Positions 3,801-52,522 of a DNA stretch of 64,000 nt are shown piece by piece. The notes beneath the pieces are model-generated. The model ran no database searches. It saw only the letters and a program-made list of their open reading frames with translations, and was not told the origin of the DNA. This DNA is from Haplodiscus bocki (lineage: Eukaryota): the NCBI GenBank assembly GCA_965655095.1, contig OZ296648.1, forward strand, positions 178,994,001 through 179,058,000, in the 5' to 3' direction. Position 1 is the first letter of the stretch, and each line of letters begins with the position of its first letter. Made by a program: the position numbers and the translations under genes.

Positions 3801-4007
3801 TTACTTTTTACGATTTTGGTGCTATAGTTCTTAGTCTTTCCTTTTTAGACGCTGTTGTTCGCTGTGGCTGATTTCATTTGGGAAGATGAAGCTTCCAGAT
3901 GTTGCGAGTTTAATGACGGAGAAAACGGTCCCCTTTTTTTCCGATATACCAGCGTTGAATTTCGGCTGGTGTTTTACTGGTATAGCAGCGGAAACTACCG
4001 CCGCTAC

Positions 4008-4970: not shown

Positions 4971-5224
4971 TATTGTAAAACTATTAGTTCATTATATTAA
5001 ACTATTATTTTCCGTTGTAATTTATATTGCGAGAAAGGAAAATCTTTCTCTATGTAAGTTGATTTTTTTATCCGGAAATTTTCAATTGGGATCGAACATC
5101 AATCATCACGTTTTTTTAAAAGCCAAAATGTTTTTCTCGATACTTAGAAGGCAATTTTGACAACCTTGCCGAATAATAATTGCTCAAAGTCCAAGAAAAA
5201 CTACGAATACATAGTTTTTTTTGT

Positions 5225-5299: not shown

Positions 5300-7970
5300 T
5301 CTGGATGAGTAGAATGAGGTTCTGAAAACCCTGCTGAAAACTTTTTGCGCGAACAAATTGGTGGTTTATTTCCTAATGTCGGGGCCCAAGTTGCCTGAAT
5401 TTTGCACTGGCGTAACGATGTGCTCTTTTCTTTGACACATTTAAATTTAATTGCTGATCGACATTCTTTTGATATTCTTTCCTGCAAAAAAACCACAAAA
5501 TTAATCTGTTTTGTTTTGTCAACTTGAATCACACTTTTTGTCATAGTATAAGTCAGGTTTCATCTACATTTAGGGCTCCAAACTGCCTGAATTTTGCTTG
5601 AGCTGTACGAAGAGTCTCTTCTTTTGTATCACACAATAAGATTTTTTACAGTCTAGAGCTTTTTTGGCAGTTTGTTTTCTGATAAAATTTTGAAAACTGA
5701 GCCACTTTCGGCCAGTTTAACGGTAGTTGTCACAATCTAGGTTGTGTAATTTTGCATTTAGGCAATCAAAACAAAACTGAATTTTTCACAAACTGAACAA
5801 ATAGCCTCTCATCTATGACACACTAAGCTATAGCGGTTGTCTGGATGTTTTTCGATAGCTTCGTTTGCAATGAAAACTCGAAAACCATGCTTGTTTTGAC
5901 CAATTTGTTGAGACGTGCCTTAATATAGGCGGTTTATATCTGCATGAAGAGCTTCAAAATGTCTGTACTTTAAACGGGCTAGACAAAAGATTCTGTTCTT
6001 TCATAGAGTGAAGCTAGTTCAGTCTGACACTTCTTTGATAGCTTTGTTACCAATAGAATCTCAAAAACTGAGCAATTTTTTGGCCAAATGGACCGATGTT
6101 GCAATAGATTGGTAGTTTTTTTTCCATTTGTGGGGCCTCCAGTTGCCTAAGGTTTGATCGCGTTGAACGCTGAAAAACTGGTTTTGTTTTGTTTTATTAC
6201 AAAAAAAATTCTGCCTGCAGTCCAACAGCATTTCGATAGTCATGTTTATGTTTTCGACAGAAGTATAAAAAGAGAACTACGTTTGGTCACTCACACAGAA
6301 TTTGCCAACTTGGAAACCTTTTCCTCCCGAGTGTACGTCTCGCAACTGCCTGATTTTGTACAAGTTCAAGAGATAGACACTGTTTTATCACCCACTACTT
6401 TTTCGTTGCTGTCTCACACTTTTTAAAAGCTTTGTTTGTGATAGAAACTTGAAAACAAAACTAACTTTCAACAAACGGGGGAAATAGCTTTTTCTAGCAC
6501 CTTTTCTTTTGCATGTAGGTTTTTGATTTGTCTACATTTTGCACAAGTTTAACGATGAGTACTTCAATTCGTACACTACACATTGATTGTAGTCTGGCGT
6601 TTTCTGGCAATTTTTCCGCGAAAAGCTAGCTAGTTTTGTCAATTGGGCACGCAATTTGTCACTACATAAGTATTTATTTTCATTCAGGACTTAAACTTGC
6701 CTGAAGATTGCACAAGCTGAATGAAGAGAATCAGTTCTGTCGCAAACTTTTTTTTAGTTCAGTTCGACATATCATCCACGTTTCTGTTGGCGATACAATC
6801 TCGAAAATCGAGCCCTTTTTCCGGCCAATTTGACAACAGTTGTCATAATAAAAGTCATTTATGTCTGAATGCCGGGCTCTAAACTGCCCGATTTTTGTGA
6901 AGTTTGAAAGACCAGACTAGCTTTCATCACAAAATATTTTCTGATTGCAGTCCGACAGTTTATCGAGAGTCTTGTTTGCGACAGAATCTTGGAAGTTGAG
7001 CCACCAATGGCCAATTTGATCAAATTTGCAACACTAAGGTTCCTTTTCTGCCAGACGTAGGTCTCCGAAAAACCCAACTTTTGCCCAAGTTTAACAAACA
7101 GAAAAAGTGTGTATCACAATTTAGGTTTTAGGTCTGGTTTGATTGTTTTAGACAGTTTTGTTTGCGACAGATTCTTGAAAACGGAGCCATTTTTCTGACC
7201 GATTCGTCAAGATTGCCATCAGAGTAGTTAGGTTTTTCTACCATTTGTGGGAACGCAAGTTGTCTTTGTCTGACTTCTGCACAGTTTTATCGAAGGGCGA
7301 TTTTCACTCGCTCATTCAACTTTACTTTTTGTCTGACACTTTCTCCATAGGTTTGTTTCCGATGGAAACTTTAAAACCGAGAATTTTTTGGCCAATTTGA
7401 CCTAAGTTGCCATATAACAGTTTCTTTTTTCCCGCATATAAGGTTCCAGTCTGCCTGAATTTTGATTGAACTTCAATTTCAAAGCCTTTCAATCACACAC
7501 TCAACTTTATTGTTGTTATAACACTTTGGCAGTAGCTCTCCTTCCGATAAAAACCTGAAAAGGAAGAAAATTTTGACAAGTTTGACTGAAGTTGTCAATT
7601 TACAGGTCGTTCATTTCCTCAGAAAGCGCTCCAATTTGCCTTTTTTGCTAAAACTCAACAAAAAACAAAAAATTAATCAATTAAACACTATTTTTAGGTG
7701 CATTCAAACAATTTTCCGACTGTTTGGTCTGCAATAGAATCCTGAAAGACGAAGCACTTCCTTGCAAATTGATCGAAGTTTCCCAATTAAAGGTCGTTTT
7801 GTTCCCCGAGTAGTCAGTTACACTGCTTGAACTTTGCTTAAGCTGAACAATCAGACTGTTTTTAGGATCAGAGTAAAAATCGGTTGACTGTGACAGATTT
7901 CCTTTAATTGCCATAGGACGTCAGGAACCGGACCATTTCCGGTCATTTCCACAAAAATTACTTTTTTTAA
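5300..7970 (+). repeat. Diverged ~180-190-bp satellite monomers (left old layer, about 14 monomers)
   Basis: A TTGCGATAGAATCTTGAAAA-like anchor occurs at ~5680, 5866, 6048, 6254, 6437, 6616, 6789, 6977, 7163, 7357, 7542, 7729 and 7905. A GGGCTCCAAACTGCCTGAATTTTGC-like box occurs at ~5381 and ~5573. Confidence 0.85.
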
Positions 7971-10900
7971 GTACTCCTCTCACCAGTGTAGCACTCGCAA
8001 CTGCCTGACATTTGCACAAGGCTAAGGAACAGGCACTGTTCTATCAAGAACTTTTTTGTTGCTGTCCGACAATTTACAAAAACTTTGTTTGCGATGAGCT
8101 TGAAAACCAAGCTAAACCTGGCCCTGCTGACAAAAACTGGCATTTCATTGCTCCTTCCTCTTTGAACGTGGCGCTCTGATTTCTGCTTGAAGCTTGCAAA
8201 AGCAAAATGTTGAGCATTTAGTTTCCACACACTGAAGATTGATCGTGGTCCACGGTCTTTCTGGCAGTTTTTGTCTGCGAAAAAAATTAAACGGCTAGCT
8301 AATGTTGTCATTTTGATACATAAATTGTCATTTTTAATTTTTTCCATGCAGGCCGTAAACTTCTTTGAATTTTGCAAAAGTTGAACGTTGAGACTCAACT
8401 CTATCGCGAACTACTTTTTGGTTCAGTCCGACAACTCTTTAAAAAAGTTTTTGGCGATAGATTTATGAGAACTGAACCAAAAATGACCAACTTGATCAAA
8501 ATAGGCTTTTGAATTGTTGGTTTTTGCACATGTAGGGTGCCAGAATACCTGAAATTTGCACTAACACAACAAAACGACTTTGTTCTGAGCTATGATAAGT
8601 TTTTTTGCACGACAGTTTTTCTAAGAATTGTTTGCGACAAAATCTTGGAATTCGAGCCAGTTATGGTCAATTCGACCGAAGTTGCAACAGTTTATTTTTT
8701 TCGTTGCTGCAATAAAGGCTCCAAAAGGCCTAAGTTTACGCGGCTAAGCAGGCATAATGGGTCTGATTACAATTTCTTTTGGGGAAACTCCGACAGTTTT
8801 CTTTGCGACAATATCCTAAAAACTGAGCCCTTTTTTGGCCGAGTTGACCAAAGTTGCATCGAAATGGGTTCACTTTTTCCGCATATAGGGTTCCACACTG
8901 TTTGAATTTTTTATAGGCCTAATCTTCATAGCTTCTCTTTTGCACACTTAACTTCATTCTTGGTCCATCACCTTTGCGATAGCTCTTTTTCCGATAGAAC
9001 GCTGAAAAGCAAACAAATTGTGCCGGCTTTGATTGAAATTGTTAATTTAAAGTCGCTTACATCTTTATGCAGATCTCCAACTTGCTTGTTTGTTGCAGAG
9101 GATGAACGACAAAAAAAGAGACTATGTTCTATCGAACACTACCTTTAGGTGTATTCTAACAGTTTCCCGAGGGTTTGTTCTGCAATAAAGTCTGAAAATT
9201 GAAGCAGTTTTGGCCAAACTGTGCGAAGTTGCCTCATTAAAGGTCATTTTTGTCCACAAGTAGTCATTCAAACTGCTTGATTTCCACACAGGCTCAACGA
9301 TTAAACTATTTTTAAGATCAGAGCGAAACTTGGTTCCTTCTGACAGATTTCTCTTTTTTTTGCGATACGCTTCAGAAACCGGACTACTTTCGGTCACTTC
9401 CACAAAGAATGCCTTTTTGTAGATACTCCTCTCCCAAGTATAGCAGTCGCAACTGCCTGACATTTGCACAAGGCTAAAGAACAAGCACTGTTCTATCAAG
9501 AACTTTTTTGTTGCTGTCCCACAATGTACAAAAACTTTGTTTGCGATGAGCTTGAAAACCAAGCCAAACCTGGCCCTGCTGACAAAAACTGGCATTTCAT
9601 TGCTCCTTCCTTTTTGCACGTGGCGCTCTGATTTTTGCTTGAAGCTTGCAAAAGCAAAGTGTTGAGCTTTTGCTCTCCACACACTGAAGATTGATCGTGG
9701 TCCGGGGTCTTTCTGAAGTTTTTGTTTGCGAAAAAATTTAAACGGCTGGCTAATGTTGTCAATTTGATACATAAATTGTCATTTTGTATTTTTTCCATGC
9801 AGGCCGTAAACTTCTTTGAATTTTGCAAAAGTTGAACGTTGAGACTCAACTCTATCGCAAACTACTTTTTGGTTCAGGCCGACAACACTTCGATAAAATT
9901 TTTGGCGATAGATTTATGAGAACTGAACCAAAAATGACCAACTTGATCAAAATAGGCCTTTGAATTGATAGTTTTTGCACACGTAAGGTGCCATACTACC
10001 TGAAATTTGCACTAATCTAGCAAAACGACTTTGTTCTGAGCTAAGATAGGTTTATTTTTGGCACGACATTTTTTCTAACAATTGTTTGCGACAGAATCTT
10101 GGAATTCGAGCCAGTTATGGTCAATTCGACCGAAGTTGCAGCAGTTTGTTTTTTTTCGTTGCTGCAATAACTGCTCCAAAAGGCCTAAGTTTACGCGGCT
10201 AAGCAGTCACATCGAGTCTGATTACAATTTCTGTTTGCGGAACACCGACAGTTTTCTTTGCGATAATGTCCTAAAAACTGAGCCCTTTTTTGGCCGAGTT
10301 GACCAAAGTTGCCTCGAAATGGGTTCAATATTTCCGCATATAGGGTTCCACACTGTTTGATTTTTATATAGGCCTAATCTTCATAGCCTCTCTATTGCAC
10401 ACTTAACTTCATTCTTGGTCCAAAACCTTTGCGATAGCTCTTTTTCCGATAGAACCCTGAAAAGCAAACAATTTTTGACCGCTTTGACTGAAATTGTTAA
10501 TTTAAAGGTCGTTTACATCATTATGCAGATCTCCCACTTGCTTGTTTCTTGCAGAGGCTATACGACAAAAAAAAAGAGACTATGTTCTATCGAACACTAC
10601 CTTTAGGTGTATTCTAACAGTTTCCCGAGGGTTTGTTCTGCAATAAAGTCTGAAAGTTGAAGCAGTTTTGGCCAAACTGTGCGAAGTTGCCTCATTAAAG
10701 GTCGTTTTTGTCCACAAGTAGTCATTCAAACTGCTTGATTTCCACACAGGCTCAACGATCAAACTATTTTTAAGATCAGAGCGAAACTTGGTTCCTTCTG
10801 ACAGATTTCTCTTTTTTTTGCGATACGCTTCAGAAACCGGACTACTTTCGGTCACTTCCACAAAGAATGCCTTTTTGTAGATACTCCTCTCCCAAGTATA

Positions 10901-13900
10901 GCAGTCGCAACTGCCTGACATTTGCACAAGGCTAAAGAACAAGCACTGTTCTATCAAGAACTTTTTTGTTGCTGTCCCACAATATACAAAAACTTTGTTT
11001 GCGATGAGCTTGAAAACCAAGCCAAACCTGGCCCTGCTGACAAAAACTGGCATTTCATTGCTCCTTCCTTTTTGCACGTGGCGCTCTGATTTTTGCTTGA
11101 AGCTTGCAAAAGCAAAGTGTTGAGCTTTTGTTCTCCACACACTGAAGATTGATCGTGGTCCGGGGTCTTTCTGAAGTTTTTGTTTGCGAAAAAATTTAAA
11201 CGGCTGGCTAATGTTGTCAATTTGATACATAAATTGTCATTTTGTATTTTTTCCATGCAGGCCGTAAACTTCTTTGAATTTTGCAAAAGTTGAACGTTGA
11301 GACTCAACTCTATCGCAAACTACTTTTTGGTTCAGGCCGACAACACTTCGATAAACTTTTTGGCGATAGATTTATGAGAACTGAACCAAAAATGACCATC
11401 TTGATCAAAATAGGCCTTTGAATTGATTGCTTTTGCACACGTAAGGTGCCATACTACCTGAAATTTGCACTAATCTAACAAAACGACTTTGTTCTGAGCT
11501 AAGATAGGTTTATTTTTGGCACGACATTTTTTCTAACAATTGTTTGCGACAGAATCTTGGAATTCGAGCCAGTTATGGTCAATTCGACCGAAGTTGCAGC
11601 AGTTTGTTTTTTTTCGTTGCTGCAATAACTGCTCCAAAAGGCCTAAGTTTACGCGGCTAAGCAGTCACAACGAGTCTGATTACAATTTCTGTTTGGGGAA
11701 CACCGACAGTTTTCTTTGCGATAATGTCCTAAAAACTGAGCCCTTTTTTGGCCGAGTTGACCAAAGTTGCCTCGAAATGGGTTCAATATTTCCGCATATA
11801 GGGTTCCACACTGTTTGATTTTTATATAGGCCTAAACTTCATAACCTCTCTACTGCACACTTAACTTCATTCTTGGTCCAACACCTTTGCGATAGCTCTT
11901 TTTCCGATAGAACCCTGAAAAGCAAACAATTTTTGACCGCTTTGACTGAAATTGTTAATTTAAAGGTCGTTTACATCATTATGCAGATCTCCCACTTGCT
12001 TGTTTCTTGCAGAGGCTATACGACAAAAAAACAGACTATGTTCTATCGAACACTACCTTTAGGTGTATTCTAACAGTTTCCCGAGGGTTTGTTCTGCAAT
12101 AAAGTCTGAAAGTTGAAGCAGTTTTGGCCAAACTGTGCGAAGTTGCCTCATTAAAGGTCGTTTTTGTCCACAAGTAGTCATTCAAACTGCTTGATTTCCA
12201 CACAGGCTCAACGATTAAACTATTTTTAAGATCAGAGTGAAACTTGGTTCCTTCTGACAGATTTCTCTTTTTTTTGCGATACGCTTCAGAAACCGGACTA
12301 GTTTCGGTCACTTCCACAAAGAATGCCTTTTTGTAGATACTCCTCTCCCAAGTATAGCCCTCGCAACTGCCTGACATTTGCACAAGGCTAAAGAACAGGC
12401 ACTGTTCTATCAAGAACTTTTTTGTTGCTGTCCCACAATATACAAAAACTTTGTTTGCGATGAGCTTGAAAACCAAGCCAAACCTGGCCCTGCTGACAAA
12501 AACTGGCATTTCATTGCTCCTTCCTTTTTGCACGTGGCGCTCTGATTTTTACTTGAAGCTTGCAAAAGCAAAATGTTGAGCATTTGCTTTCCACACACTG
12601 AAGATTGATCGTGGCCCAGGGTCTTTCTGGCAGTTTTTGTTTGCGAAAAACTTTAAACGGCTAGCTAATGTTGTCAATTTGATACATAAATTGTCATTTT
12701 GTATTTTTTCCATGCAGGCCGTAAACTTCTTTGAACTTTGCAAAAGTTGAACGTTGAGACTCAGTTCTATCGCAAACTACATTTTGTTTCAGTCCGACAA
12801 CTCTTCGATAAAGTTTTTGGCGATAGATTTATGAGAACTGATCCAAAAATGACCAACTTGATCAAAATAGGCTTTTGAATTGTTGGTTTTTGCACATGTA
12901 GGGTGCCAGAATACCTGAAAATTGCACTAACTTAACAAAACGACTTTGTTTTGAGCTACGATAGGTTTATTTTTCGCACGACAGTTTTTCTAAGAATTGT
13001 TTGCGACAGAATCTTGGAATTCGAGCCAGTTATGGTAAATTCGATCGGAGTTGCAACAGTTTATTTTTTTCGTTGCTGCAATAACGGCTCCAAAAGGCCT
13101 AAGTTTACGCGGCTAAACAGGCAAATTGAGTCTGATTATAATTTCTGTTGGGGGATCACCGACAGTTTTCTTTGCGATATTATCCTAAAAACTCAGACCT
13201 TTTTTGGCCGAGTTGACCAAAGTTGCCTCGAAATGGGTTCAATTTTTCCGCATATAGGTTTCCACACTGTTTGAATTTTATAAAGGCCTAATCTTCATAG
13301 CCTCTCTATTGCACACTTAACTTCATTCTTGGTCCAAAACCTTTGCGATAGCTCTTTTTCCGATAGAACCCTGAAATGCAAACAAATTGTGACCGCTTTG
13401 ACTGAAATTGTTAATTTAAAGGTCGTTTACATCATTATGCAGATCTCCAACTTGCTTGTTTCTTGCAGAAGCTCTACGACAAAAAAAAGAGACTATGTTC
13501 TATCGGACACTACCTTTAGGTGTATTCTAACAGTTTCCCGAGCGTTTGTTCTGCAATAAAGTCTGAAAATTGAAGCAGTTTTGGCCAAACTGTGCAAAGT
13601 TGCCTCATTAAAGGTCGTTTTTGTCCACAAGTAGTCATTCAAACTGCTTGATTTCCACACAGGCTCAACGATTAAACTATTTTTAAGATCAGAGCGAAAC
13701 TTGGTTCCTTCTGACAGATTTCTCTTTTTTTCTGCGATACGCTTCAGAAACCGGACTACTTTCGGTCACTTCCACAAAGAATGCCTTTTTGTAGATACTC
13801 CTCTCCCAAGTATAGCACTCGCAACTGCCTGACATTTGCGCAAGGCTAAAAACAGGCACTGTTCTATCAAGAACTTTTTTGTTGCTGTCCCACAATATAC

Positions 13901-16900
13901 AAAATCTTTGTTTGCGATGAGCTTGAAAACCAAACTAAACCTGGCCCTGCTGACAAAAACTGGCATTTCATTGCTCCTTCCTTTTTGCACGTGGCGCTCT
14001 GATTTTTGCTTGAAGCTTGCAAAAGCAAAATGTTGAGCATTTGTATTCCACACACTGAAGATTGATCGTGGTCCGGGGTCTTTCTGGCAGTTTTTGTTTG
14101 CGAAAAAATTTAAACGGCTAGCTAATGTTGTAAATTTGATACATAAATTTTCATTTTGTATTTTTTCCATGCAGGCCGTAAAGTTCTTTGAAAATTGCAA
14201 AAGTTGAACGTTCAGACTCAGCTCTATCGTAAAATACTTTTTGGTTCAGTCCGACAACTCTTCGATAAAAATTTTGGCGATAGATTTATGAGAACTGAAT
14301 CAAAAATGACCAACTTGATCAAAATTGGCTTTTGAAATGTTGGTTTTTGCACATGTAGGGTGCCAGAATACCTGAAACTTGCACTAACTTAACAAAACGA
14401 CTTTATTCTGAGCTACGATAGGTTTAATTTTCGCACGACAGTTTTTCTGAGAATTGTTTGCGACAGAATCTTGGAATTCGAGCCACTTATGGTCAATTCG
14501 ACCGAAGTTGCAACAGTTTATTTTTTTCGTTGCTGCAATAACGGCTCCAAAAAGCCTAAGTTTACGCGGATAAGCAGGCATATTGAGTCTGATTACAATT
14601 TCTGTTGGGGGAACACCGACAGTTTTCTTTGCGATAATATCCTAAAAACTCAGTCCTTTTTTGGCCGAGTTGACCAAAGTTGCCTCGAAATGGGTCCAAT
14701 TTTTCCGCATATAGGGTTCCACACTGTTTGAATTTTATATAAGCCTAATCTTCGTAGCCTCTCTATTGCACACTTAACTTCAATCTTGGTCCAACACCTT
14801 TGCGATAGCTCTTTTTCCGATAGAACCCTGAAAAGCAAACAAATTGTGACCGCTTTGACTGAAATTGTTAATTTGAAACTTGTTTACATCATTATGCAGA
14901 TCTCCAACTTCCTTGTTTCTTGCAGAGGCTCTACGACACAAAAAGAGACTATGTTCTATCGATCACTAACCTTTAAGTGTATTCTAACAGTTTCCCGAGC
15001 GTTTGTTCTGCAATAAAATCTGAAAATTGAAGCAGTTTTGGCCAAAATGTGCGAAGTTGCCTCATTAAAGCTCGTTTTTGTGCAAAAGTAGTCATTGAAA
15101 CTGCTTGATTTTCACACAGGCTCATCGATTAAACTATTTTTAAGATCAGAGCGAAACTTGGTTCCTTCTGACAGATTTCTCTTTTTTTTGCGATACACTT
15201 CAGAAACCGGACTACTTTCGATCACTTCCACAAAAATTGCCCTTTTGCAGATACTCCGCTCCCAAGTATAGCACTCGCAACTGCCTGACATTTGCACAAG
15301 GCTAAAGAACAGGCACTGTTCTATCAAGAACTTTTTTGTTGCTGTCCCACAATATACAAAAACTTTGTTTGCGATGAGCTTGAAAACCAAGCCAAACCTG
15401 GCCCTGCTGATAAAAACTGGCATTTCATTGCTCCTTCCTTTTTGCACGTGGCGCTCTGATTTTTACTTGAAGCTTGCAAAAGCAAACTATTGAGCATTTG
15501 TTTTCCACACACTGAAGATTGATCGTGGCCAAGGGTCTTTCTGGCAGTTTTTGTTTGCGAAAAACTTTAAACGGCTAGCTAATGTTGTCAATTTGATACA
15601 TAAATTGTCATTTTGCATTTTTTCCATGCAGGCCGTAAACTTCTTTGAAATTTGCAAAAGTTGAACGTTGAGACTCAGTTCTATCGCAAACTACATTTTG
15701 TTTCAGTCCGACAACTCTTCGATAAAGTTTTTGGCGATAGATTTATGAGAACTGATCCAAAAATGACCAACTTGATCAAAACAGGCTTTTGAATTGTTGG
15801 TTTTTGCACATGTAGGGTGCCAGAATACCTGAAAATTGCACTAACTTAACAAAACGACTTTGTTCTGAGCTACGATAGGTTTATTTTTTGCACGACAGTT
15901 TTTCTAAGAATTGTTTGCGACAGAATCTTGGAATTCGAGCCAGTTATGGTCAATTCGACCGAAGTTGCAACAGTTTATTTTTTTCGTTGCTGCAATAACG
16001 GCTCCAAAAGGCCTAAGTTTACGCGGCTAAGCAGGCATATTGGGTCTGATTACAATTTCTTTTGGGGGGAACTCCGACAGTTTTCCTTGCGATAATATCT
16101 TAAAAACTGAGCACTTTTTTGGCCGAGTTGACCAAAGTTGCCTCGAAATGGGTTCACTTTTTCCGCATATAGGGTTCCACACTGTTTGAATTTTATATAG
16201 GCCTAATCTTCATAGCCTCTCTATTGCACACTTAACTTCATTCTTGGTCCAAAACCTTTGCGGTAGCTCTTTTTCCGATAGAACCCTGAAAAGCAAACTA
16301 TTTTTGACCGCTTTGACTGAAATTGTTAATTTAAAGGTCGTTTACATCATTATGCAGATCTCCAACTTGCTTGTTTCTTGCAGAGGCTATACGACAAAAA
16401 AAAGAGACTATGTTCTATCGAACACTACCTTTAGGTGTATTCTAACAGTTTCCCGAGGGTTTGTTCTGCAATAAAGTCTGAAAGTTGAAGCAGTTTTGGC
16501 CAAACTGTGCGAAGTTGCCTCATTAAAGGTCGTTTTTGTCCACAAGTAGTCATTCAAACTGCTTGATTTCCACACAGGCTCAACGATTAAACTATTTTTA
16601 AGATCAGAGCGAAACTTGGTTCCTTCTGACAGATTTCTCTTTTTTTTTGCGATAGGCTTCAGAAACCGGACTACTTTCGGTCACTTCCACAAAAATTGCC
16701 TTTTTGTAGATACTCCTCTCCCAAGTATAGCACTCGCAACTGCCTGACATTTGCACAAGGCTAAAGAACAGGCACTGTTCTATCAAGAACGTTTTTGTTG
16801 CTGTCCCACAATAAACAAAAACTTTGTTTACGACGAGCTTGAAAACCAAGCCAAACCTGGCCCTGCTGACAAAAACCGGCATTTCATTGCTCCTTCCTTT

Positions 16901-37900: not shown

Positions 37901-40900
37901 TTTCTGTTGGGGGAACACCGACAGTTTTCTTTGCGATAATATCCTAAAAACTGAGCACTTTTTTGGCCGAGTTGACCAAAGTTGCCTCGAAATGGGTTCA
38001 ATATTTCCGCATATAGGGTTCCACACTGTTTGAATTTTTTATATAGGCCTAATCTTCATAGCCTCTCTATTGCACACTTAACTTCATTCCTGGTCCAAAA
38101 CCTTTGCGATAGCTCTTTTTCCGATAGAACCCTGAAAAGCAAACGAATTGTGACCGCTTTGACAGAAATTGTTAATTTAAAGGTCGTTTACATCATTATG
38201 CAGATTTCCAACTTGCTTGTTTCTTGCAGAGGCTGTACGACAAAAAAAGAGACTATTTTCTATCGAACACTACCTTTAGGTGTATTCTAACACTTTCCCG
38301 AGGGTTTGTTCTGCAATAAAGTCTGAGAGTTGAAGCAGTTTCGGCCAAACTGTGCGAAGTTGCCTCATTAAAAGTCGTTTTTGTCCACAAGTAGTCATTC
38401 AAACTGCTTGATTTCCACACAGGCTCAACGATTAAACTATTTTTAAGATCAGAGCGAAACTTGGTTCCTTCTGACAGATTTCTCTTTTTTTGCGATACGC
38501 TTCAGAAACCGGACTACTTTCGGTCACTTCCACAAAGAATGCCTTTTTGTAGATACTCCTCTCCCAAGTATAGCACTCGCAACTGCCTGACATTTGCACA
38601 AGGCTAAAAACAGGCACTGTTCTATCAAGAACTTTTTTGTTGCTGTCCCACAATATACAAAAACTTTGTTTGCGATGAGCTTGAAAACCAAACTAAACCT
38701 GGCCCTGCTGACAAAAACTGGCATTTCATTGCTCCTTCCTTTTTACACGTGGCGCTCTGATTTTTGCTTGAAGCTTGCAAAAGCAAAATGATGAGCAATT
38801 GCTTTCCACACACTGAAGATTGATCGTGGTCCGGGGTCTTTCTGGCAGTTTTGTTTGCGAAAAAATTTAAACGGCTAGCTAATGTTGTCAATTTGATACA
38901 TAAATTGTAATTTTGTATTTTTTCCATGCAGGCCGTAAACTTCTTTGAATTTTGCAAAAGTTGAACGTTGAGACTCAACTCTATCGCAAACTACTTTTTG
39001 GTTCCGGCCGACAACACTTCGATAAAGTTTTTGGCGATAGATTTATGAGAACTGAACCAAAAATGACCAACTTGAGCAAAATAGGCTTTTGAATTGATGG
39101 TTTTTGCACATGTAAGGTGCCATACTACCTGAAATTTGCACTAATCTAACAAAACGACTTTGTTCTGAGCTACGATAGGTTTATTTTTGGCACGACATTT
39201 TTTCTAACAATTGTTTGCGACAGAATCTTGGAATTCGAGCCAGTTATGGTCAATTCGACCGAAGTTGCAACAGTTTGTTTTTTTCGTTGCTGCAATATCG
39301 GCTCCAAAAGGCCTAAGTTTACGCGGCTAAGCAGGCATATCGAGTCTGATTACAATTTCTGTTGGGGGAACACCGACAGTTTTCTTTGCGATAATATCCT
39401 AAAAACTGAGCCCTCTTTTGGCCGAGTTGACCAAAGTTGCCTCGAAATGGGTTCAATATTTCCGCATATAGGGTTCCACACTGTTTGAATTTTTTATATA
39501 GGCCTAATCTTCATAGCCTCTCTATTGCACACTTAACTTCATTCCTGGTCCAAAACCTTTGCGATAGCTCTTTTTCCCATAGAACCCTGAAAAGCAAACA
39601 AATTGTGACCGCTTTGACTGAAATTGTTAATTTAAAGGTCGTTTACATCATTATGCAGATCTCCAACTTGCTTGTTTCTTGCAGAGGCTGTACGACAAAA
39701 AAAGAGACTATGTTCTATCGAACACTACCTTTAGGTGTATTCTAACAGTTTCCCGAGGGTTAGTTCTGCAATAAAGTCTGAAAGTTGAAGCAGTTTTGGC
39801 CAAACTGTGCGAAGTTGCCTCATTAAAGTTCGTTTTTGTCCTCAAGTAGTCATTCAAACTGCTTGATTTCCACACAGGCTCAACGATTAAACTATTTTTA
39901 AGATCTGAGCGAAACTTGGTTCCTTATGACAGATTTCTCTTTTTCTTGCGATAGGCTTCAGAAACCGGACTACCTTCGGTCACTTCCACAAAGAATGCCT
40001 TTTTGTAGTTACTCCTCTCCCAAGTATAGGACTCGCAACTGCCTGACATTTGCACAAGGCTAAAGAACAGGCACTGTTCTATCAAGAACTTTTTTGTTGC
40101 TGTCCGACAATATACAAAAACTTTGTTTGCAATGAGCTTGAAAACCAAACTAAACCTGGCCCTGTTGACAAAAACTGGCATTTCATTGCTCCTTCCCTTT
40201 TGCACGTGGCGCTCTGATTTTTGCTTGAAGCTTGCAAAAGCAAAATGTTGAGCATTTGCTTTCCACACATTGAAAATTGATCGTGGTCCGGGGTCTTTCT
40301 GGCAGTTTTTGTTTGCGAAAAAATTTAAACGGCTAGCTAATGTTGTCAATTTGATACATAAATTGTCATTTTGTATTTTTTCCATGCAGGCCGTAAACTT
40401 CTTTGAATTTTGCAAAAATTGAACGTTGAGACTCAACTCTATCGCAAACTACTTTTTGGTTCAGGCCGACAACACTTCGATACAGTTTTTGGCGATAGAT
40501 TTATGAGAACTGATCCAAAAATGACCAACTTGATCAAAATAGGCTTTTGAATTGTTGGTTTTTGCACATGTAAGGTGCCAAACTACCTGAAATTTGCACT
40601 AATCTAACAAAACGACTTTGTTCTGAGCTACGATAGGTTTATTTTTGGCACGACATTTTTTCTAACAATTGTTTGCGACAGAATCTTGGAATTCGAGCCA
40701 GTTATGGTCAATTCGACCGAAGTTGCAACAGTTTGTTTTTTTTCGTTGCTGCAATAACGGCTCCAAAAGGCCTAAGTTTACGCGGCTAAGCAGGCATATC
40801 GAGTCTGATTACAATTTCTGTTGGGGGAACACCGACAGTTTTCTTTGCGATAATATCCTAAAAACTGAGCCCTCTTTTGGCCGAGTTGACCAAAGTTGCC

Positions 40901-43900
40901 TCGAAATGGGTTCAATATTTCCGCATATAGGGTTCCACACTGTTTGAATTTTTTATATAGGCCTAATCTTCATAGCCTCTCTATTGCACACTTAACTTCA
41001 TTCCTGGTCCAAAACCTTTGCGATAGCTCTTTTTCCCATAGAACCCTGAAAAGCAAACAAATTGTGACCGCTTTGACTGAAATTGTTAATTTGAAACTCG
41101 TTTACATCATTATGCAGATCTCCAACTTCCTTGTTTCTTGCAGAGGCTGTACGACAAAAAAAAGAGACTATGTTCTATCGAACACTACCTTTAGGTGTAT
41201 TCTAACAGTTTCCCGAGGGTTAGTTCTGCAATAAAGTCTGAAAGTTGAAGCAGTTTTGACCAAACTGTGCGAAGTTGCCTCATAAAAGGTCGTTTTTGTC
41301 CACAAGTAGTCATTCAAACTGCTTGATTTCCACACAGGCTCAACGATTAAACTATTTTTAAGATCAGAGCGAAACTTGGTTCCTTCTGACAGATTTCTCT
41401 TTTTTTTCCGATACGCCTCAGAAACCGGACTACTCTCGGTCACTTCCACAAAGAATTCCTTTTTTGTAGATACTCCTGCCCAAGTATAGCACTCGCAACT
41501 GCCTGACATTTGCACAAGGCTAAAGAACAGGCACTGTTCTATCAAGAACTTTTTTGTTGCTGTCCCATAATATACAGAAACTTTGTTTGCGATGAGCTTG
41601 AAATCCAAGCCAAACCTGGCCCTGCTGACAAAAACTGGCATTTCATTGCTCCTTCCCTTTTGCACGTGGCGCTCTGATTTTTGCTTGAAGCTTGCAAAAG
41701 CAAAATGTTGAGCATTTGCTTTCCACACATTGAAAATTGATCGTGGTCCGGGGTCTTTCTGGCAGTTTTTGTTTGCGAAAAAATTTAAACGGCTAGCTAA
41801 TGTTGTCAATTTGATACATAAATTGTCATTTTGTATTTTTTCCATGCAGGCCGTAAACTTCTTTGATTTTTGCAAAAGTTGAACAATGAGACTCAGTTCT
41901 ATCGCAAACTACATTTTGTTTCAGTCCGACAACTCTTCGATAAAGTTTTTGGCGATAGATTTATGAGAACTGATCCAAAAATGACCAACTTGATCAAAAT
42001 AGGCTTTTGAATTGTTGGTTTTTGCACATGTGGGGTGCCAGGATACATGAAAATTGCACTAATTTAACAAAACGACTTTTTTCTGAGCTACGATAGGTTT
42101 ATTTTTGGCACGACATTTTTTCTAACAATTGTTTTGCGACAGAATCTTGGAATTCGAGCCAGTTATGGTAAATTCGATCGAAGTTGCAACAGTTTGTTTT
42201 TTTCGTTGCTGCAATAACGGCTCCAAAAGGCCTAAGTTTACGCGGCTAAGCAGGCAAATTGAGTCTGATTACAATTTTTGTTGGGGGTACACCGACAGTT
42301 TTCTTTGCGACAATATCCTAAAAACTGAGCCCTTTTTTGGCCGAGTTGACCAAAGTTGCATCGAAATGGGTTCAATTTTTCCGCATATAGGTTTCCACAC
42401 TGTTTGAATTTTTTATAGGCATAATCTTCATAGCCTCTCTATTGCACACTTAACTTCAATCTTGGTCCAACACCTTTGCGATAGCTCTTTTTCCGATAGA
42501 ACCCTGAAAAGCAAACAAATTGTGACCGCTTTGACTGAAACTGTTAATTTAAAGGTCGTTTACATCATTATGCAGATCTCCAACTTGCTTGTTTCTTGCA
42601 GAGGCTGTACGACAAAAAAAAAAGAGACTATGTTCTATCGAACACTACCTTTAGGTGTATTCTAACAGTTTCCCGAGGGTTTGTTCTGCAATAAAGTCTG
42701 AGAGTTGAAGCAGTTTCGGCCAAACTGTGCGATGTTGCCTCATTAAAGGTCGTTTTTGTCCACAAGTAGTCATTCAAACTGCTTGACTTCCCACAGGCTC
42801 AACGATTAAACTATTTTTAAGATCAGAGCGAAACTTGGTTCCTTCTGACAGATTTCTCTTTTTTTTGCGATACGCTTCAGAAACCGGACTACTTTCGGTC
42901 ACTTCCACAAAGAATGCCTTTTTGTAGATACTCCTCTCCCAAGTATAGCACTTGCAACTGCCTGACATTTGCACAAGGCTAAAGAACAGGCACTGTTCTA
43001 TCAGGAACTTTTTTGTTGCTGTCCCACAATATACAAAAAACTTTGTTTGCGATGAGCTTGAAAACCAAGCTAAACCTGGCCCTGCTGACAAAAACTGGCA
43101 ATTCATTGCTCCTTCCCTTTTTCACGTGGCGCTCTGATTTTTGCTTGAAGCTTGCAAAAGCAAAATGTTGAGCATTTGCTTTCCACACATTGAAAATTGA
43201 TCGTGGTCCGGGGTCTTTCTGGCAGTTTTTGTTTGCGAAAAAATTTAAACGGCTAGCTAATGTTGTCAATTTGATACATAAATTGTCATTTTGTATTTTT
43301 TCCATGCAGGCCGTAAACTTCTTTGATTTTTGCAAAAGTTGAACAATGAGACTCAGTTCTATCGCAAACTACATTTTGTTTCAGTCCGACAACTCTTCGA
43401 TAAAGTTTTTGGCGATAGATTTATGAGAATTGATCCAAAAATGACCAACTTGATCAAAATAGGCTTTTGAATTGTTGGTTTTTGCACATGTGGGGTGCCA
43501 GAATACCTGAAAATTGCACTAATCTAACAAAACGACTTTTTTCTGAGCTACGATAGGTTTATTTTTGGCACGACATTTTTTCTAACAATTGTTTTGCGAC
43601 AGAATCTTGGAATTCGAGCCAGTTATGGTAAATTCGATCGAAGTTGCAACAGTTTGTTTTTTTCGTTGCTGCAATAACGGCTCCAAAAGGCCTAAGTTTA
43701 CGCGGCTAAGCAGGCAAATTGAGTCTGATTACAATTTTTGTTGGGGGTACACCGACAGTTTTCTTTGCGACAATATCCTAAAAACTGAGCCCTTTTTTGG
43801 CCGATTTGACCAAAGTTGCATCGAAATGGGTTCAATTTTTCCGCATATAGGTTTCCACACTGTTTGAATTTTTTATAGGCATAATCTTCATAGCCTCTCT

Positions 43901-44400
43901 ATTGCACACTTAACTTCATTCTTGGTCCAAAACCTTTGCGATAGCTCTTTTTCCGATAGAACCCTGAAAAGCAAACAAATTGTGACCGCTTTGACTGAAA
44001 TTGTTAATTTAAAGGTCGTTTACATCATTATGCAGATTTCCTACTGGCTTGTTTCTTGCAGAGGCTGTACGACAAAAAAAAGAGACTATGTTCTATCGAA
44101 CACTACCTTTAGGTGTATTCTAACACTTTACCGAGGGTTTGTTCTGCAATAAAGTCTGAGAGTTGAAGCAGTTTTGGCCAAACTGTGCGATGTTGCCTCA
44201 TTAAAGGTCGTTTTTGTCCACAAGTAGTCATTCAAACTGCTTAATTTTCACACAGGCTCAACGATTATACTTTTTTTAAGATCAGAGCGAAACTTGATTC
44301 CTTCTGACAGATTTCTCTTTTTTTGCGATACACTTCAGAAACCGGACTACTTTCGGTCGCTTCCACAAACATTGCCTTTTTGTAGTACTCCTCTCCCAAG
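7970..44400 (+). repeat. Homogeneous higher-order satellite array: 25 tandem units of ~1457 bp, each an 8-mer of ~172-189-bp monomers
   Basis: The unit anchor TTCC(G/C)ATAGAA..CTGAAA recurs 25 times from ~8990 to ~43952 at 1453-1460-bp steps. Within one unit the monomer anchors lie at ~8990, 9180, 9360, 9541, 9726, 9903, 10086 and 10258. Most units carry GAATTC, AAGCTT and AGATCT sites at fixed positions. Confidence 0.97.
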
Positions 44401-47400
44401 TATAGCACTCACAACGGACTGAAATTTGCATAAGGCTAAGGAACAGGCACTGTTCTATCAAGAACTTTTTCATTGCTGTCCGAGAATTCACAAACACTTT
44501 GTTCGCGATGGAAACTTAAAAACCAACCTAAACTTGGCCCTTTTCACATTTTTTGCAGTTTATAGCGATTCTGTTTCTTTCTGTGGGGCCCCTTTTTCCT
44601 AAACTTTGCAGAAGCGTATTCTTGAATATTGATTATGGTGTTGCGGTCTTTCTGGGTGGTTTTTTGGCGAAAAAACTCAAAAATCTGTGTAATTTTGTCA
44701 GTTTGAAGAAGAAAATGTTTCCTTTCGGGTGGTTTTTTGTTTAGGGATTGATTTTCCTTAAAGATTGCAGAGGTTAAAAAGAGAGAATTTTTTGTATCGC
44801 ATACTAGTTTTTGATTCAGTCCAACAATTCTTCGAGTTTTCTAGCAATTTAGACCTGAAGACAGACAAAATTAACCAACTTGATCCAAATCGTCTTTTTG
44901 CTTGTAGAGTTTTGCACAAGTAGGGCTACAGAATACTTGATTTTTAAAAGTGCTCAGAACAAAAACGTCTGTTCTAAATTGGTATGGTATTTTTTATTTG
45001 CGGCACGACAGGTTTTTCATGAAAGTTTCAGACATATTGAAAATCGAGCTTCTTCTGGCCAAATTGACCAAATTTGCCATAACATAGGCCCTTTTGTTCC
45101 GCATTCGAGTTCTAGACGGCCTGAAATTTGTTTAAGTTTAGATTTCGAAGCATTTTAATCTAAGTTTCAAGTTTAATGTTGGTCCCATACTCTTGCGAAA
45201 GCTTTGTTTCCAATAGAAACCTGAAAGGCTGAAAAGCAAGTAGTTTTGGCCAGTTTGAGTACGTTTGATTTTTAACATGTTGCTTAAATCAGCATCCAGA
45301 GCCCCAAGTTGCCTATGTTTTGCAGCGGCGGAACGAATGTAAAAAAAGTCTGTTCTATCATACACTAGTTTTAGGTGCAGTCGAACAGTTTCCCACATGT
45401 AGTGATTCGTACTGCCTTAAATTTGCACTGGCTGAATGAGAAGGTTCTCTTTTAAAATCACAGAAAATTTGGGTTCAGTCCGCCAGAGTACCTTTCTTTG
45501 CGACAAGGGTTTAAAACCCGGACCCATTTTGGCCACTTCCACAAAAAAATCGTTTTCTGAAAATATTTCTCTTTCGAATGTAGCACTCGCAACTGCCTGA
45601 TTTTTGCACAAGTTCAGGAACTAGGCACTAATTTATCACGCAGTTCTTTATGGCTCTCCGAGTGTCTTCAAAACTTCCTTTGCTGAGAAAGTTATTACCA
45701 AGCTAAACATGGCCCTTTTGATAAACTTGGATTTTTGTAGCGCCTTGTTTTCTTGTGGGGCTCTGACTTTCGTCTATCGTTTGCAGAAGCGTACCGTTAA
45801 TTTTTATACACAAACTAAATATTGATTGTAGTGCGGCGTGTTTTTGGTAGCTTTGCTGCAGAAAAACTGAAAAATTTTGATAAATTTGACACTTTGACAT
45901 GAATACTGTTACTTTATTTGTTTTTTTTTCAATCAGGACTTAAACTTGCCTGAATAAAGCAGAGGTTGAACGGAGAGACTTTTTCTATCACACATTACTT
46001 CTTGGTTCAGTCCGACAATTCTTCGAGATTTCTGTTTGCGATAGATTCTTGAAAAATGACCCACAAAGAGGCAAATTGATCGAAGTTTTTCTGCTTGTAG
46101 TTTTTTTGCACATATAGGGTTCCAGAAAACCATAATATTGAACACAGTTAAAAAAGAGTATCTGTTTTGTGCTATGCTAACTTTCAATAGTGGTACTTCG
46201 GTTTTTCTATTGAATACTCGTGACAGGATATTGGAAGTCGAGCCAGTTATGGTCAGTTCGACCGAAGTTGAAACAATTTAAGTGTTTTTCGCCGGATTTA
46301 AGACTCCAAATTGCCCATCTTTGTTCAAACTAAACAAGCATTATGGATTTCTCCTTAGTTTTTTTTCGGTAGAACTCCGACAGTTGTTCGACAGTTTCGT
46401 TTACGATGAAATTTCATAAGTTGAGCCCTTTTTTGACCAAATTTACCACATATGCCACAACATAGGTTCTTTTCTCCCACATATAGGTTTCCAGACTGCT
46501 GGAATTTTGATTAGGTTGAAACTTAAAAGCCTTTCAATTACACACTTAACTTCATTTTCGGTCCAACACTTTTGCAATAGCTCTCTGTCCGATAGAAACC
46601 TGAAAAGCGAGCTCTTTTTGGCCAGGTCGACTAAACTTGTCATTTTACAGGTCCCTTTCTCTCGCTTGTAGAGCTCTAAATTCCGTAAGTTCTGATGAGG
46701 CTGAGCGACTACTGAAGAGAGTTTGTTCTCTCATATACTTAATTTGAGCGCACTCGAAAATTAATCGGTCAGTTTTTTCTGCGAGAGAATTCTGAACGCC
46801 GAAACCTTGCTGGCCAAATTGATCAACGTTGCCTCATTTTGGGGTCGTTTATGTCCACAAGTACTCATTCAAACTGCCTGAATTTCTGAATTTCGCACAA
46901 GATGAACGAGCAAACTGTTTTTAGATCACAGCGAAGTTCGGTTCAACTTGACAGTCTTCTTTCATTTTTGTGGAAAGACTTCAAAAACTGGACCACCTCT
47001 GGTCAATTCTTCAAAAAACCGTTTCTTGACGATACTTCTCTCCCAAGCGTACCACTCGCTACTGCCTGACTTTTGCACAAGTTTAAGGATTAGGCAATGT
47101 TCTATCAAGCAGTTTTGTATCGCTCCTCGAGTCTCTTCAAAAACTTTGTCTGCAATAAAAATGCTTACCAAGCTAAATGCGGCCCCCTTGACAAAGTTGG
47201 GTTTCTGTAGCTCTGTTCTATTTGCACGTAAAACTTTGATTTGTGCGTAAACTTTAGTCCAGCGTTTCTTTGGAAAGTTTTGTTAAAAAAACTGTGAAAC
47301 CTAGCTAACTTTGTCAACCTGAGGCAAAACTTGTCTTTTTTCAAGTGTTTTTTTCGTTAAAGGATAAAACTTGTCTCAATATTGCAGATTCTGAACAAAA

Positions 47401-48986
47401 AGACTCGGTTGTATCACACCTTTTTTTGAAGTCAGTCCGATATTTCTTCCTTATTTTTGTTCGCGATAGGTTTCTAAAACCAAGTAACAATCGCCCAACA
47501 CCGATTTGTAATTTTGTGCACGCGTATGGCTTCAAAGTGCCCGAACAAAAAATGCCCGCGGTTAACAAAGAGTTTTTGTTTTTTGCTATGTTAACTTTCA
47601 GTTTTGTTACTTCCGTTTTTTTATTGAAAATTTGCAACACAATTTTGAAAAACCAGGTTCTTTTCTCAAATTTGAGATTTAGTTGCGAAAACATAATTCT
47701 TTTTTTGCCATAGGGTTCCAAACTGCATGCATTTTGATCGGGCCTATACTTCAAAGCTTCTCAATCGCACACTCAAGTTTAGTTTCGGTCCAAAATTTTT
47801 GCTAAGGCTCTGTTTCCGATGTAATCCTGAAAAGCAAGCTAGTTTCGACCAGTTTGACAAAATATGTCGTTTCACAGTTCGTTTATGTCCGCATGTAGAG
47901 CTCCAAGTTGCGCAAGTTTTGCAACGGCTGAACGAGGGAAAAAAGAATCTGTCCTATCAAACAGTAACTTTGGGAGCAGTCAAACAGTTTTCTGAGAGGT
48001 TTGTCTGCAAAAGTATCGGGGAAGTTGAAGCACTTTTGGCCAAATTGATCAAAATTACATCAATATAGTTCTTTTTTGTCCACATCTATTCATTCAGTTT
48101 GCCCTTACATAGGTCTTTCTCTTCCACGAAGAGGGTTCTAAACTGCAGGAATTTTGAAAAGGTTGAAACAACGAAGTCTTTCAGGGACGGACTCATTTTC
48201 AATCTCAGTCCAACACGTTTGCGATAGCTCTGTTTCCGATAGAAAATTGAAACGCCAATCATTTTCTACCAGTTTGACTAAAAATCTCATTTTACTGGTC
48301 ATTTTTATCCGCATGTGGAGCTCCGAGTTGTCGAAGCTTTGCAGAAGCTAAACGAAGAAAAAACTTGCTCTCATGTATCCTGCACTAAATATAGATGTAG
48401 TTGAACATTTTAACGACAGTTCTGTCCACCAGAGAGTCCTAACAGCTGAAACACTTCTGGCCAAAATGATCAAAGTTGCCTCAATATATTTCTTTTATGT
48501 CTGCATGTAACTATCGAAATTGGCTGCGTTTCGCACAAGTTGGCCATATAGACTCTTTTCTAGATCACAACAAAAGTGGGTTTACTCCAACAGTTTTTTG
48601 TTTTGCCGTAGAATTTCAAAAACCAGACCACATTTGTTCACTTTGAGAAAAATTGCGTTTTTATGTACTTTTCACCGACGTATAGCACTCGGAACTGCCT
48701 CACTTTTGCATAAGCCTAAAGAACGGACATCATTCGATCACAAAATTTTGCTTTACTATCCGACTGTTCTTTAAACCTTGTTTACCAAAGACACTTGAAA
48801 ACCAAGCTAAACTTGGCCTTTTCGAAAGGGATGAGTTTCCAAAACGCCTTTTTTTCTGCATGTGGGGCTCTGCTTCTTTCCTTAAAGTGTCCACAAGCGT
48901 GACGCTAAGCCTTCATTTTTCAGAAACTAAACAATGTTCGAGGTCCGGCGTGCCTTTGGTAGTTTTTTATCAAAAAACTTCGCTGT

Positions 48987-52217: not shown

Positions 52218-52522
52218 TTTGAACTACATTGCCATAAAGTAAGTGTTTTTGTGCTGCATAAAAGGTTCCAGACTGCCTGACTGTTGATTAGGCACAAACT
52301 TCAAAACCTTGCAACGACAAACTCAGTTTTCCGATAGGAACCTCAAAGGCAAGCCAATTTCGGCCAGTTTGAACTACATTGCCATAAAGTAAGTGTTTTT
52401 GTGCTGCATAAAAGGTTCCAGACTGCCTGACTGTTGATTAGGCACAAACTTCAAAACCTTGCAACGACAAACTCAGTTTTCCGATAGGAACCTCAAAGGC
52501 AAGCCAATTTCGGCCAGTTTGA
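52218..52522 (+). repeat. Perfect 150-bp tandem duplication
   Basis: GAACTACATTGCCATAAAGT starts at 52221 and again at 52371. The two copies read identically. Confidence 0.95.

What the first reader, a model, noticed from the sequence alone, without database searches (positions are those of the whole stretch)
7970..44470. Both edges of the homogeneous array fall at the same HOR phase, giving an integer 25 units
Seen: high identity begins near TACTCCTCT at 7972 and decays just after TACTCCTCT at 44386. The distance is 36,414 bp = 25 x 1456.6. Both edge copies carry GCTAAGGAAC (~8021, ~44435), where internal copies read GCTAAAGAAC or GCTAAAAAC. The old flank also has TAAGGA at this position (~47085, 51567, 56969). 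Inference: one 8-mer segment of the old array was amplified in place (unequal exchange, re-replication or rolling-circle reinsertion) and pushed the old layer apart.
Basis: partly seen in the sequence, partly recalled or inferred. Interest (0 to 1): 0.7.

Follow-up and report, generated by a model that had tools for sequence, protein, structure and literature searches.

The report
Young satellite array amplified in place
One 1.46-kb unit of an old, decayed tandem repeat was copied head to tail 25 times where it stood, with both ends in step with the old repeat; this is a clean but ordinary example of how satellite DNA renews itself from within.

Summary
Window 7972-44385 is 25 complete units of 1452-1461 bp, each built of eight ~182-bp monomers. 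Each unit differs from the consensus by 2.2-4.2%. The flanks carry the same unit in register at only 65-73% identity. GCTAAGGAAC occurs only at 8021 and 44435.

"Same phase" holds only to within about 70-130 bp. The left change point is at unit column 18 (support 1-24) and the right at column 86 (support 80-97). Young-type states run to column 105, so the array is 25 units plus 0.06-0.10 of a unit. Phase coincidence alone is weak evidence (p about 0.09-0.2). Four other results carry the inference:
- Both junctions are seamless and colinear.
- The young units are structurally uniform, while the old units are 7-, 8- and 9-mers.
- The founder is closest to its immediate neighbours.
- Two young-unit test words (29- and 38-mers) match nowhere else in the 1.5-Gb assembly.

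Nested multi-unit duplications, and a clean hybrid unit inside the array, point to homologous unequal exchange with conversion tracts. A single burst does not fit. One internal event spans 3 units plus 178 bp at other phases.

The whole ~63-kb block lies between the two arms of one copy of a dispersed element, whose short internal repeats it expanded.

This is a new member of a known kind (layered expansion, intra-array seeding). Earlier notes of this scan describe similar in-place, transposon-derived arrays elsewhere in this genome.

The parts
4998..5199 (+). Left arm of the dispersed element that brackets the whole satellite block
   Evidence: BLAST to non-satellite parts of dispersed copies: L016 2231-2416 at 76.6% over 197 bp (E 3e-31), L013 2423-2573 (E 4e-17), L011 728-884 (E 1e-11). 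The left termini are aligned.
5356..6323 (+). Outermost left layer: partial, very diverged units (L2 and a further fragment)
   Evidence: nhmmer with the young-unit profile: 5356-6001 matches columns 541-1166 and 6037-6314 matches columns 824-1083. About 62% identity to the consensus.
6324..7971 (+). Old unit L1, 1648 bp, 9-monomer-like (columns 849-1042 present twice), in register with the young array
   Evidence: nhmmer: 6324-7378 matches columns 8-1042 and 7371-7967 matches columns 849-1452. 73% pairwise identity to the consensus. Its last ~200 columns carry 14 of 22 young-diagnostic states, against 6 of 33 further in (Fisher p 0.0013).
7972..44385 (+). Young array: 25 complete units (U01-U25) of 1452-1461 bp, each made of eight ~182-bp monomers
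   Evidence: BLAST and MAFFT give 93.8-100% identity to a reference unit and 2.2-4.2% distance from the consensus. Monomers are 171-207 bp and 43-59% alike. Left change point is at column 18, support 1-24. A 29-mer (up to 2 mismatches) and a 38-mer (up to 3 mismatches) hit only this array in the 1.5-Gb assembly.
44386..44535 (+). Shoulder: partial 26th copy of young type at the start of old unit R01
   Evidence: Young-diagnostic states at columns 39-105 (8 of 9) and old states from column 147. The two-state change point is at 44471, column 86. It has 11 private changes in 146 columns and shares G55, G97, T103 and T142 with U01. Identity per 50 columns is 0.90, 0.90, 0.82, then 0.55.
44536..60223 (+). 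Old layer on the right (rest of R01 to R13): the same unit in register at 65-71% identity, with many units lacking about one monomer (columns ~690-850)
   Evidence: nhmmer coordinates, identity matrix, local younger duplications at lags 3879 and 1293. The part laid (44441-47032) is single-copy in depth and without differences in two samples.
60224..64000 (+). Outer, more decayed layer of the same family. It continues about 4.5 kb past the window and is then followed by the element's right arm
   Evidence: Weak nhmmer hits reach the window end and L003 159-4477. The right arm is at L003 4505-5279 (E 5e-55 to L010 2695-3459).
15765..20319 (+). Most recent internal amplification (U06 column 514 to U09 column 691): 3 units plus 178 bp, nearly identical at a lag of one unit. 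U09 is a hybrid unit.
   Evidence: U06 against U07 differs only at columns 7-513, plus column 858. U07 against U08 differs at 3 columns. U09 against U08 has 0 differences in columns 1-691 and 56 after that. The k-mer lag profile is 0.82-0.99 over 15501-18500.
21082..34190 (+). Nested multi-unit duplications inside the young array (U10-U12 resemble U16-U18; U11-U12 resemble U13-U14)
   Evidence: Pairwise difference matrix: U10/U16 26, U11/U17 21, U12/U18 43, U11/U13 15, U12/U14 21. Clades have 99-100% bootstrap support.

Best explanation
This is a non-coding, single-locus macrosatellite that has renewed itself from within.

An old array of a 1.46-kb unit (eight diverged ~182-bp monomers) stopped being homogenised and decayed to about 65-70% identity between copies. 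Much later one of its units, the second from the left end, was duplicated in register with its neighbour by homology-guided unequal exchange. That exchange could have been an unequal crossover or out-of-register break-induced replication. Further unequal exchanges in registers of 1, 2 and 6 units then built it up to 25 copies.

Because the duplicated length equals the old period, both edges lie at nearly the same phase. The extra 86-150 bp of young-type sequence at the right edge, and the half-young last 200 bp of the left old unit, are read as conversion tracts or exchange junctions tied to early exchanges.

Shown: the anatomy, the colinearity, confinement of the two young-unit test words to this locus, the relative ages, the hybrid unit and the nested duplications. 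Inferred: the enzymatic route and the origin of the overhang.
For: - Twenty-five uniform units with sharp steps in identity, 0.70-0.80 to 0.94-0.96 on the left and 0.92-0.98 to 0.90/0.90/0.82/0.55 on the right.
- Seamless junctions in register.
- The founder is nearest to its neighbours L1, R01 and R02.
- Clock-like distances put the crown of the young array at roughly one fifth of the age of the old layer.
- Old units are structurally heterogeneous and young ones uniform.
- The two young-unit test words occur at one locus only in the assembly.
- The tree has deep clades with 99-100% support, interleaved along the array, with U01 as sister to the rest.
- U09 is a clean hybrid, and the newest internal amplification also spans an integer plus about 0.12 unit, at phases 514 and 691.
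- The left edge lies in the best-conserved 40-column block among old units, rank 1 of 142. This fits homology-dependent pairing of 70%-identical neighbours.
- In two samples, short-read contigs give single-copy depth on the old flank and 9-28 times that depth on young-array words.
Against: - The two change points do not coincide exactly; their support intervals do not overlap.
- Phase proximity alone has p of about 0.09-0.2.
- Recombination between units only about 70% identical is inefficient.
- The branch placing U01 outside the other 24 units has only 61% support.
- No read or contig bridges the junction at 44261-44440.
- The copy number of 25 rests on the assembly.
- No second haplotype or sister species was available, so no pre-amplification allele was seen.
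Confidence: 0.75

Rival explanations
1. There was no gain of copies. About 25 pre-existing old units were homogenised by gene conversion spreading from one unit, and the edges mark where conversion happened to stop.
For: Conversion-like tracts exist: the 86-150 bp shoulder in R01, the half-young end of L1, and an internal tract of 3 units plus 178 bp. The phase match is only approximate.
Against: Old units are 7-, 8- and 9-mers with many indels, yet all 25 young units are uniform 8-mers and none has intermediate identity. Independent stop points would fall this close in phase only about 10-20% of the time. Multi-unit duplications show real copy-number change.
Confidence: 0.1
2. The first burst came from an excised circle of the unit, copied by rolling-circle replication and reinserted by homologous recombination at its own locus. 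Unequal exchange only reshaped it afterwards.
For: Reinsertion by homology gives the same seamless, in-register junctions and an integer count. The data cannot separate it from unequal exchange for the founding step.
Against: The tree is not star-like: deep clades have 99-100% support and pairwise differences range from 0.3% to 7.7%. Neither young-unit test word was found elsewhere, so no off-target reinsertion was seen. It needs more steps than exchange, which is directly documented inside the array.
Confidence: 0.1
3. It is an assembly artefact: a short array over-expanded, or reads from different haplotypes strung together.
For: Copy number was not verified by spanning reads. Logan contigs leave a hole at 44261-44440. 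One contig is not found verbatim in the assembly.
Against: Units differ by 0.3-7.7% in a structured, nested pattern. The 31-mers of a young-array contig occur 8-18 times in the assembly, while that contig's read depth is 9-10 times single copy in sample S1 and roughly 16-28 times in S2. The hole is explained by a 31-mer shared between U01 and R01. The old flank matches without differences in two samples.
Confidence: 0.03
4. A ready-made array from another locus was inserted here.
For: None beyond the sharp edges.
Against: Neither young-unit test word was found at any other locus. The junctions are in register with no filler or target duplication. The founder is closest to its immediate neighbours.
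Confidence: 0.02

Closest known systems
Layered expansion with intra-array seeding in centromeric satellite arrays (Altemose et al., bioRxiv 10.1101/2021.07.12.452052)
   Same: A new, more homogeneous repeat layer arises inside an older array of the same family and displaces older, more diverged layers to both sides. Divergence rises with distance from the core.
   Different: The locus is only about 63 kb, occurs once, and lies at 90% of a 198-Mb chromosome, with no sign of centromere function. The layers are very asymmetric (2.6 kb against 24 kb). The founder is a single unit whose junctions can be read to within about 100 bp.
[quoted passage not shown] 2017, PMC5411766)
   Same: The interior is homogenised, edge copies are left behind (U01 is the most diverged, and R01's partial copy has 7.5% private changes), and there is higher-order structure from recent rearrangements.
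   Different: The transition here is a step of 20-25 identity points within 25-150 bp. It is not a gradient over many units.
Satellite-like arrays born from the internal tandem repeats of non-autonomous mobile elements (for example oyster Helentron-carried repeats, PMC7492417; review PMC12628747)
   Same: The ~182-bp monomers occur as 3-4 copies inside a dispersed element of about 1.75 kb on many chromosomes. The satellite block here lies between that element's two arms in the same order and orientation.
   Different: The class of the element was not determined. Hairpin-like palindromes at its ends are only a lead. The expansion here reached about 63 kb and passed through an 8-monomer unit.

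Membership tests
Higher-order-repeat (HOR) satellite array | A multi-monomer unit repeated in tandem, with unit-to-unit identity far above monomer-to-monomer identity | tested here: met
   Eight monomers of 171-207 bp are 43-59% alike. The 1457-bp units are 92-99.7% alike.
Layered expansion / intra-array seeding | A young homogeneous core flanked on both sides by older copies of the same family, with divergence rising outwards | tested here: met
   Core units are 2-4% from the consensus. L1, R01 and R02 are 70-73% identical to it, R03-R13 65-69% and L2 62%. Hits are still weaker out to window-equivalent 68477.
Layered expansion / intra-array seeding | The seed comes from within the same array and not from another locus | tested here: met
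   Colinear, seamless junctions; the founder is nearest to its neighbours; neither young-unit test word matches elsewhere in the genome.
Centromeric satellite | Binding of the centromeric histone, or at least long arrays of the family at one site per chromosome | not testable with these tools
   No chromatin data are available. Elsewhere the family appears only as short copies of 100-600 bp inside a dispersed element. Nothing suggests a centromere.
Unequal-exchange product | Hybrid units and duplications in whole-unit registers | tested here: met
   U09 equals U08 over columns 1-691 and then differs at 56 sites. There are duplications at lags of 1, 2 and 6 units.
Rolling-circle burst | A star-like genealogy of the copies | tested here: not met
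   Deep clades with 99-100% bootstrap support; pairwise differences of 5 to 112 columns. A founding burst later overwritten cannot be excluded.
Transposon-derived satellite | The array is flanked by the two arms of one element copy whose normal copies hold a short run of the same monomers | tested here: met
   Left arm at window 4998-5199 and right arm at L003 4505-5279, in the same order and strand as in L010 (arm 1705-1873, repeats 1975-2592, arm 2691-3460).
Helitron/Helentron non-autonomous element | Characteristic termini and an insertion site between defined bases | tested here: inconclusive
   Palindromic hairpin-like motifs lie near both ends of the shared sequence. No diagnostic termini, target site or protein were identified.

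The most novel reading that the evidence does not exclude
The 86-150 bp of young-type sequence beyond the 25th unit, and the half-young last 200 bp of the left old unit, may be the preserved conversion-tract footprint of the founding unequal exchange. If so, the birth of a satellite layer can be read here at near-nucleotide resolution. The locus would record three generations in place: the element's 3-4 internal monomers, then an 8-monomer array, then the young array. The newest internal event (3 units plus 178 bp) would show the same signature.
Probability: 0.3. Interest if true: 0.45.

Novelty: new member of a known kind. Interest (0 to 1): 0.3.

Why it matters
The locus is small and fully assembled. 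The founder unit, both junctions, the relative ages of the layers and later exchange events can all be read directly. Such detail is usually blurred in megabase centromeric arrays. It could serve as a worked example for models of satellite turnover, covering unequal exchange with conversion tracts, edge copies left behind, and birth from a mobile element. It does not reveal a new mechanism. Earlier notes of this scan report several comparable in-place arrays in the same genome.

Tried and rejected
- Tandem Repeats Finder missed the array because its longest period is 500 bp. K-mer lags and BLAST were used instead.
- Rfam gave no match. Pfam gave no match to the longest open frames.
- The 246-codon stop-free frame on the minus strand of the consensus exceeds all 300 shuffles. 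It shows no codon-position bias among the 25 units (63/59/64 variable sites), so it is not coding.
- Distances taken from the alignment to the young-unit profile suggested that the young lineage evolved at half the rate. Direct pairwise alignments removed most of this, so it was alignment bias.
- Counting ancestral-like states per unit did not single out U01 strongly: 13, against 3-12 in other units.
- I tried to match two Logan contigs letter for letter to the assembly in order to calibrate copy number. This failed. Their 31-mers are present at 8-18 copies, so depth gives only an order of magnitude.
- The whole-genome DNA search skips very common words and did not list the young units at all. 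Absence elsewhere was therefore tested with two pattern searches.
- The class of the bracketing element was not resolved.
- I did not test whether the organism is an animal, or the reported prominin-like exon.
Full report
**Where the locus is.** The window is G000:C1:178,994,001-179,058,000. C1 is a 197.9-Mb contig of a 1.5-Gb eukaryotic assembly. The neighbouring pieces L005 and L007 each hold a 200-N gap, which I left alone.

**Checking the observation.**
- K-mer lags show one dominant period of 1455-1460 bp, confined to about 8,000-43,000.
- BLAST of one unit against the window gives 25 complete copies, 7972-44385. Each is 1452-1461 bp long and 93.8-100% identical to the reference unit.
- Colinear matches of only 73% precede the array (7384-7969 matches unit positions 863-1454). 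Matches of 69% follow it (44386-44940 matches positions 1-581).
- Each unit differs from the 25-unit consensus by 2.2-4.2%. The end units (U01 4.15%, U25 3.67%) are no worse than U05 and U09, both 4.22%.
- Every motif statement is right. TACTCCTCT is at 7972 and 44386. GCTAAGGAAC is only at 8021 and 44435. Twenty internal copies read GCTAAAGAAC and four read GCTAAAAAC. TAAGGA is at 47084, 51566 and 56969, at the homologous column of old units R03, R07 and R12.
- The unit is a true 8-mer. An anchor motif recurs at spacings of 171-207 bp, and the eight monomers are 43-59% alike.

**How sharp the edges are, and how well in phase.**
- Aligned to the consensus, identity jumps on the left from about 0.70-0.80 (L1) to 0.94-0.96 (U01).
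- On the right it goes from 0.92-0.98 (U25) through a shoulder of 0.90, 0.90 and 0.82, in 50-column windows, to 0.55-0.75.
- A two-state likelihood puts the left change at column 18 (support 1-24) and the right change at column 86 (support 80-97).
- I defined diagnostic columns as those where the young state is nearly fixed and is carried by at most 20% of other old units. At these, the start of R01 is young-type at 8 of 9 columns up to column 105 and old-type from column 147.
- The array is therefore 25 units plus about 86-150 bp.
- "Same phase" is true only to 5-10% of a unit. Two independent boundaries would fall this close with p of about 0.09-0.2.

**What carries the inference of in-place amplification.**
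1. Both junctions are seamless and in register, with no filler, loss or target duplication.
2. The flanks are the same unit in the same phase. On the left they run from 5356. On the right they run to the window's end and about 4.5 kb beyond.
3. The old units are structurally mixed. L1 has one extra monomer, and six of the thirteen right-hand units lack about one monomer at columns 690-850. All 25 young units are uniform.
4. By direct pairwise alignment the young consensus is closest to its immediate neighbours: L1 73.0% and R02 71.5%, against 68% for R07 and R12.
5. Distances are clock-like.
   - Old-to-old Jukes-Cantor distances are 0.38-0.43. Consensus-to-neighbour distances are 0.335-0.358.
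   - This gives old lineages of about 0.18-0.20 and a consensus branch shorter by about 0.03-0.05.
   - That shortfall matches young tips of 0.02-0.04.
   - An apparent two-fold slowdown in the profile-based tree was alignment bias.
6. A 29-mer with up to 2 mismatches, and a 38-mer with up to 3, match only this array in the whole assembly, 25 and 22 times.

**Mechanism.**
- The genealogy is not star-like. Clades with 99-100% support are interleaved along the array, and U01 is sister to the other 24 units, with only 61% support.
- The difference matrix shows duplications at lags of 1, 2 and 6 units: U07/U08, U02/U03, U11-U12/U13-U14 and U10-U12/U16-U18.
- U09 is a clean hybrid. It has no difference from U08 over columns 1-691 and 56 differences after that.
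- U06 differs from U07 only in columns 7-513, apart from column 858.
- This newest event, window ~15765-20319, spans 3 units plus 178 bp. It shows the same "integer plus about 0.1 unit" pattern as the whole array, at quite different phases (514 and 691).
- U06 and U09 are identical across the 178 columns. Chance does not explain this, because about 9 differences would be expected there.
- I read both overhangs as gene-conversion tracts, or nearby junctions, associated with homologous unequal exchange. There is no fixed hot phase.
- The left edge does lie in the best-conserved 40-column block among old units (rank 1 of 142). This suits pairing of neighbours that are only about 70% identical.
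- U01 and the R01 shoulder share G55, G97, T103 and T142, states common among old units. The interior has moved on from them.
- R01's shoulder also carries 11 private changes in 146 columns (7.5%; Poisson p 0.016 against 3.5%). It therefore probably split off before the crown of the 25 units.
- L1's last 200 columns are half young-type, 14 of 22 diagnostic columns against 6 of 33 further in (p 0.0013).
- Crossover and break-induced replication cannot be told apart. A founding rolling circle reinserted by homology cannot be excluded. A homology-independent route would have to hit the old period by chance.

**Independent data.** Four short-read runs from two samples hold the locus. They were laid on 41471-47032.
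- The old flank is covered by contigs without differences at single-copy depth in both samples.
- Young-array words are about 9-28 times deeper.
- No joints were reported.
- The stretch 44261-44440 is not bridged. This fits a 31-mer shared between U01 and R01 that breaks the contig graph.
- Depth gives only an order of magnitude for copy number.
- No second haplotype and no relative were available, so the search for short or empty alleles could not be done.

**Beyond the finding: origin of the locus.**
- Elsewhere in the genome the monomer family appears only as runs of about 0.4-0.7 kb (two to four monomers; about 0.6 kb in L009/L010) inside a dispersed element found on many chromosomes. Copies share 0.2-2.2 kb outside the repeats.
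- That element's left arm lies at window 4998-5199, about 150 bp before the first old monomers.
- Its right arm lies at L003 4505-5279 (window-equivalent 68505-69279), just after the last weak satellite hit.
- Order and orientation match the ordinary copy L010.
- The whole ~63-kb block therefore looks like an in-place expansion of one element's internal repeats. The young array lies one unit from the left end of the old array.
- The element has no long open frame in the two copies whose frames I listed (L012 and the arm in L003). Hairpin-like palindromes lie near both ends of the shared sequence. Its class is unresolved.

**Comparison with what is known.**
- The pattern is the published layered-expansion model with intra-array seeding (10.1101/2021.07.12.452052).
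- It also fits classical concerted evolution by unequal exchange with diverged array ends (PMC5411766).
- The origin matches transposon-born satellites (PMC7492417, PMC12628747).
- Nothing coding or structured was found. Rfam and Pfam gave no match, and the 246-codon open frame has no codon-position bias.
- Earlier unchecked notes of this scan describe similar single-locus, layered, transposon-derived arrays elsewhere in this genome. This makes the present case typical of the genome.

**Verdict.** The kind is known. The locus is a tidy worked example of modest interest.

Noticed in passing
window 4998-5199; L003 4505-5279; L009-L016: The ~182-bp monomers are the internal tandem repeats (3-4 copies, about 0.6 kb) of a dispersed element of about 1.75 kb found on many chromosomes. 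The whole ~63-kb satellite block lies between that element's two arms in the normal order and orientation. The element's class is unknown; it has hairpin-like palindromes near both ends.
   Followed up: partly
window, unit columns 1159 to 439 on the minus strand (for example 23694-24422): A stop-free frame of 246 codons in the consensus, longer than in any of 300 shuffles. It has no Pfam match and no codon-position bias among the 25 units, so it is not coding.
   Followed up: yes
window 15765-20319: The newest amplification inside the array: 3 units plus 178 bp that are almost identical at a lag of one unit, with U09 as a clean hybrid unit.
   Followed up: yes
window 48500-54400 and 55000-57900: The old right-hand layer has its own younger local duplications (lag 3879 bp, R05/R08 84% alike; lag 1293 bp, R10/R11/R12 74% alike) and a 150-bp tandem duplication at 52208-52522.
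   Followed up: partly
window 3999-4264: A 31-bp tandem repeat (8.7 copies, 83% matches) in the left flank, unrelated to the satellite.
   Followed up: no
window 41471-44260 in runs X1-X4: Relative depth of young-array contigs looks higher in sample S2 (roughly 12-28 times single copy) than in S1 (about 9-10 times). This hints at copy-number difference between individuals, but contig depths are too crude to say.
   Followed up: partly
L005 and L007 (C1:178984001-178994000 and 179088001-179098000): Each holds a 200-N assembly gap within 10-40 kb of the locus. They were left untouched.
   Followed up: no
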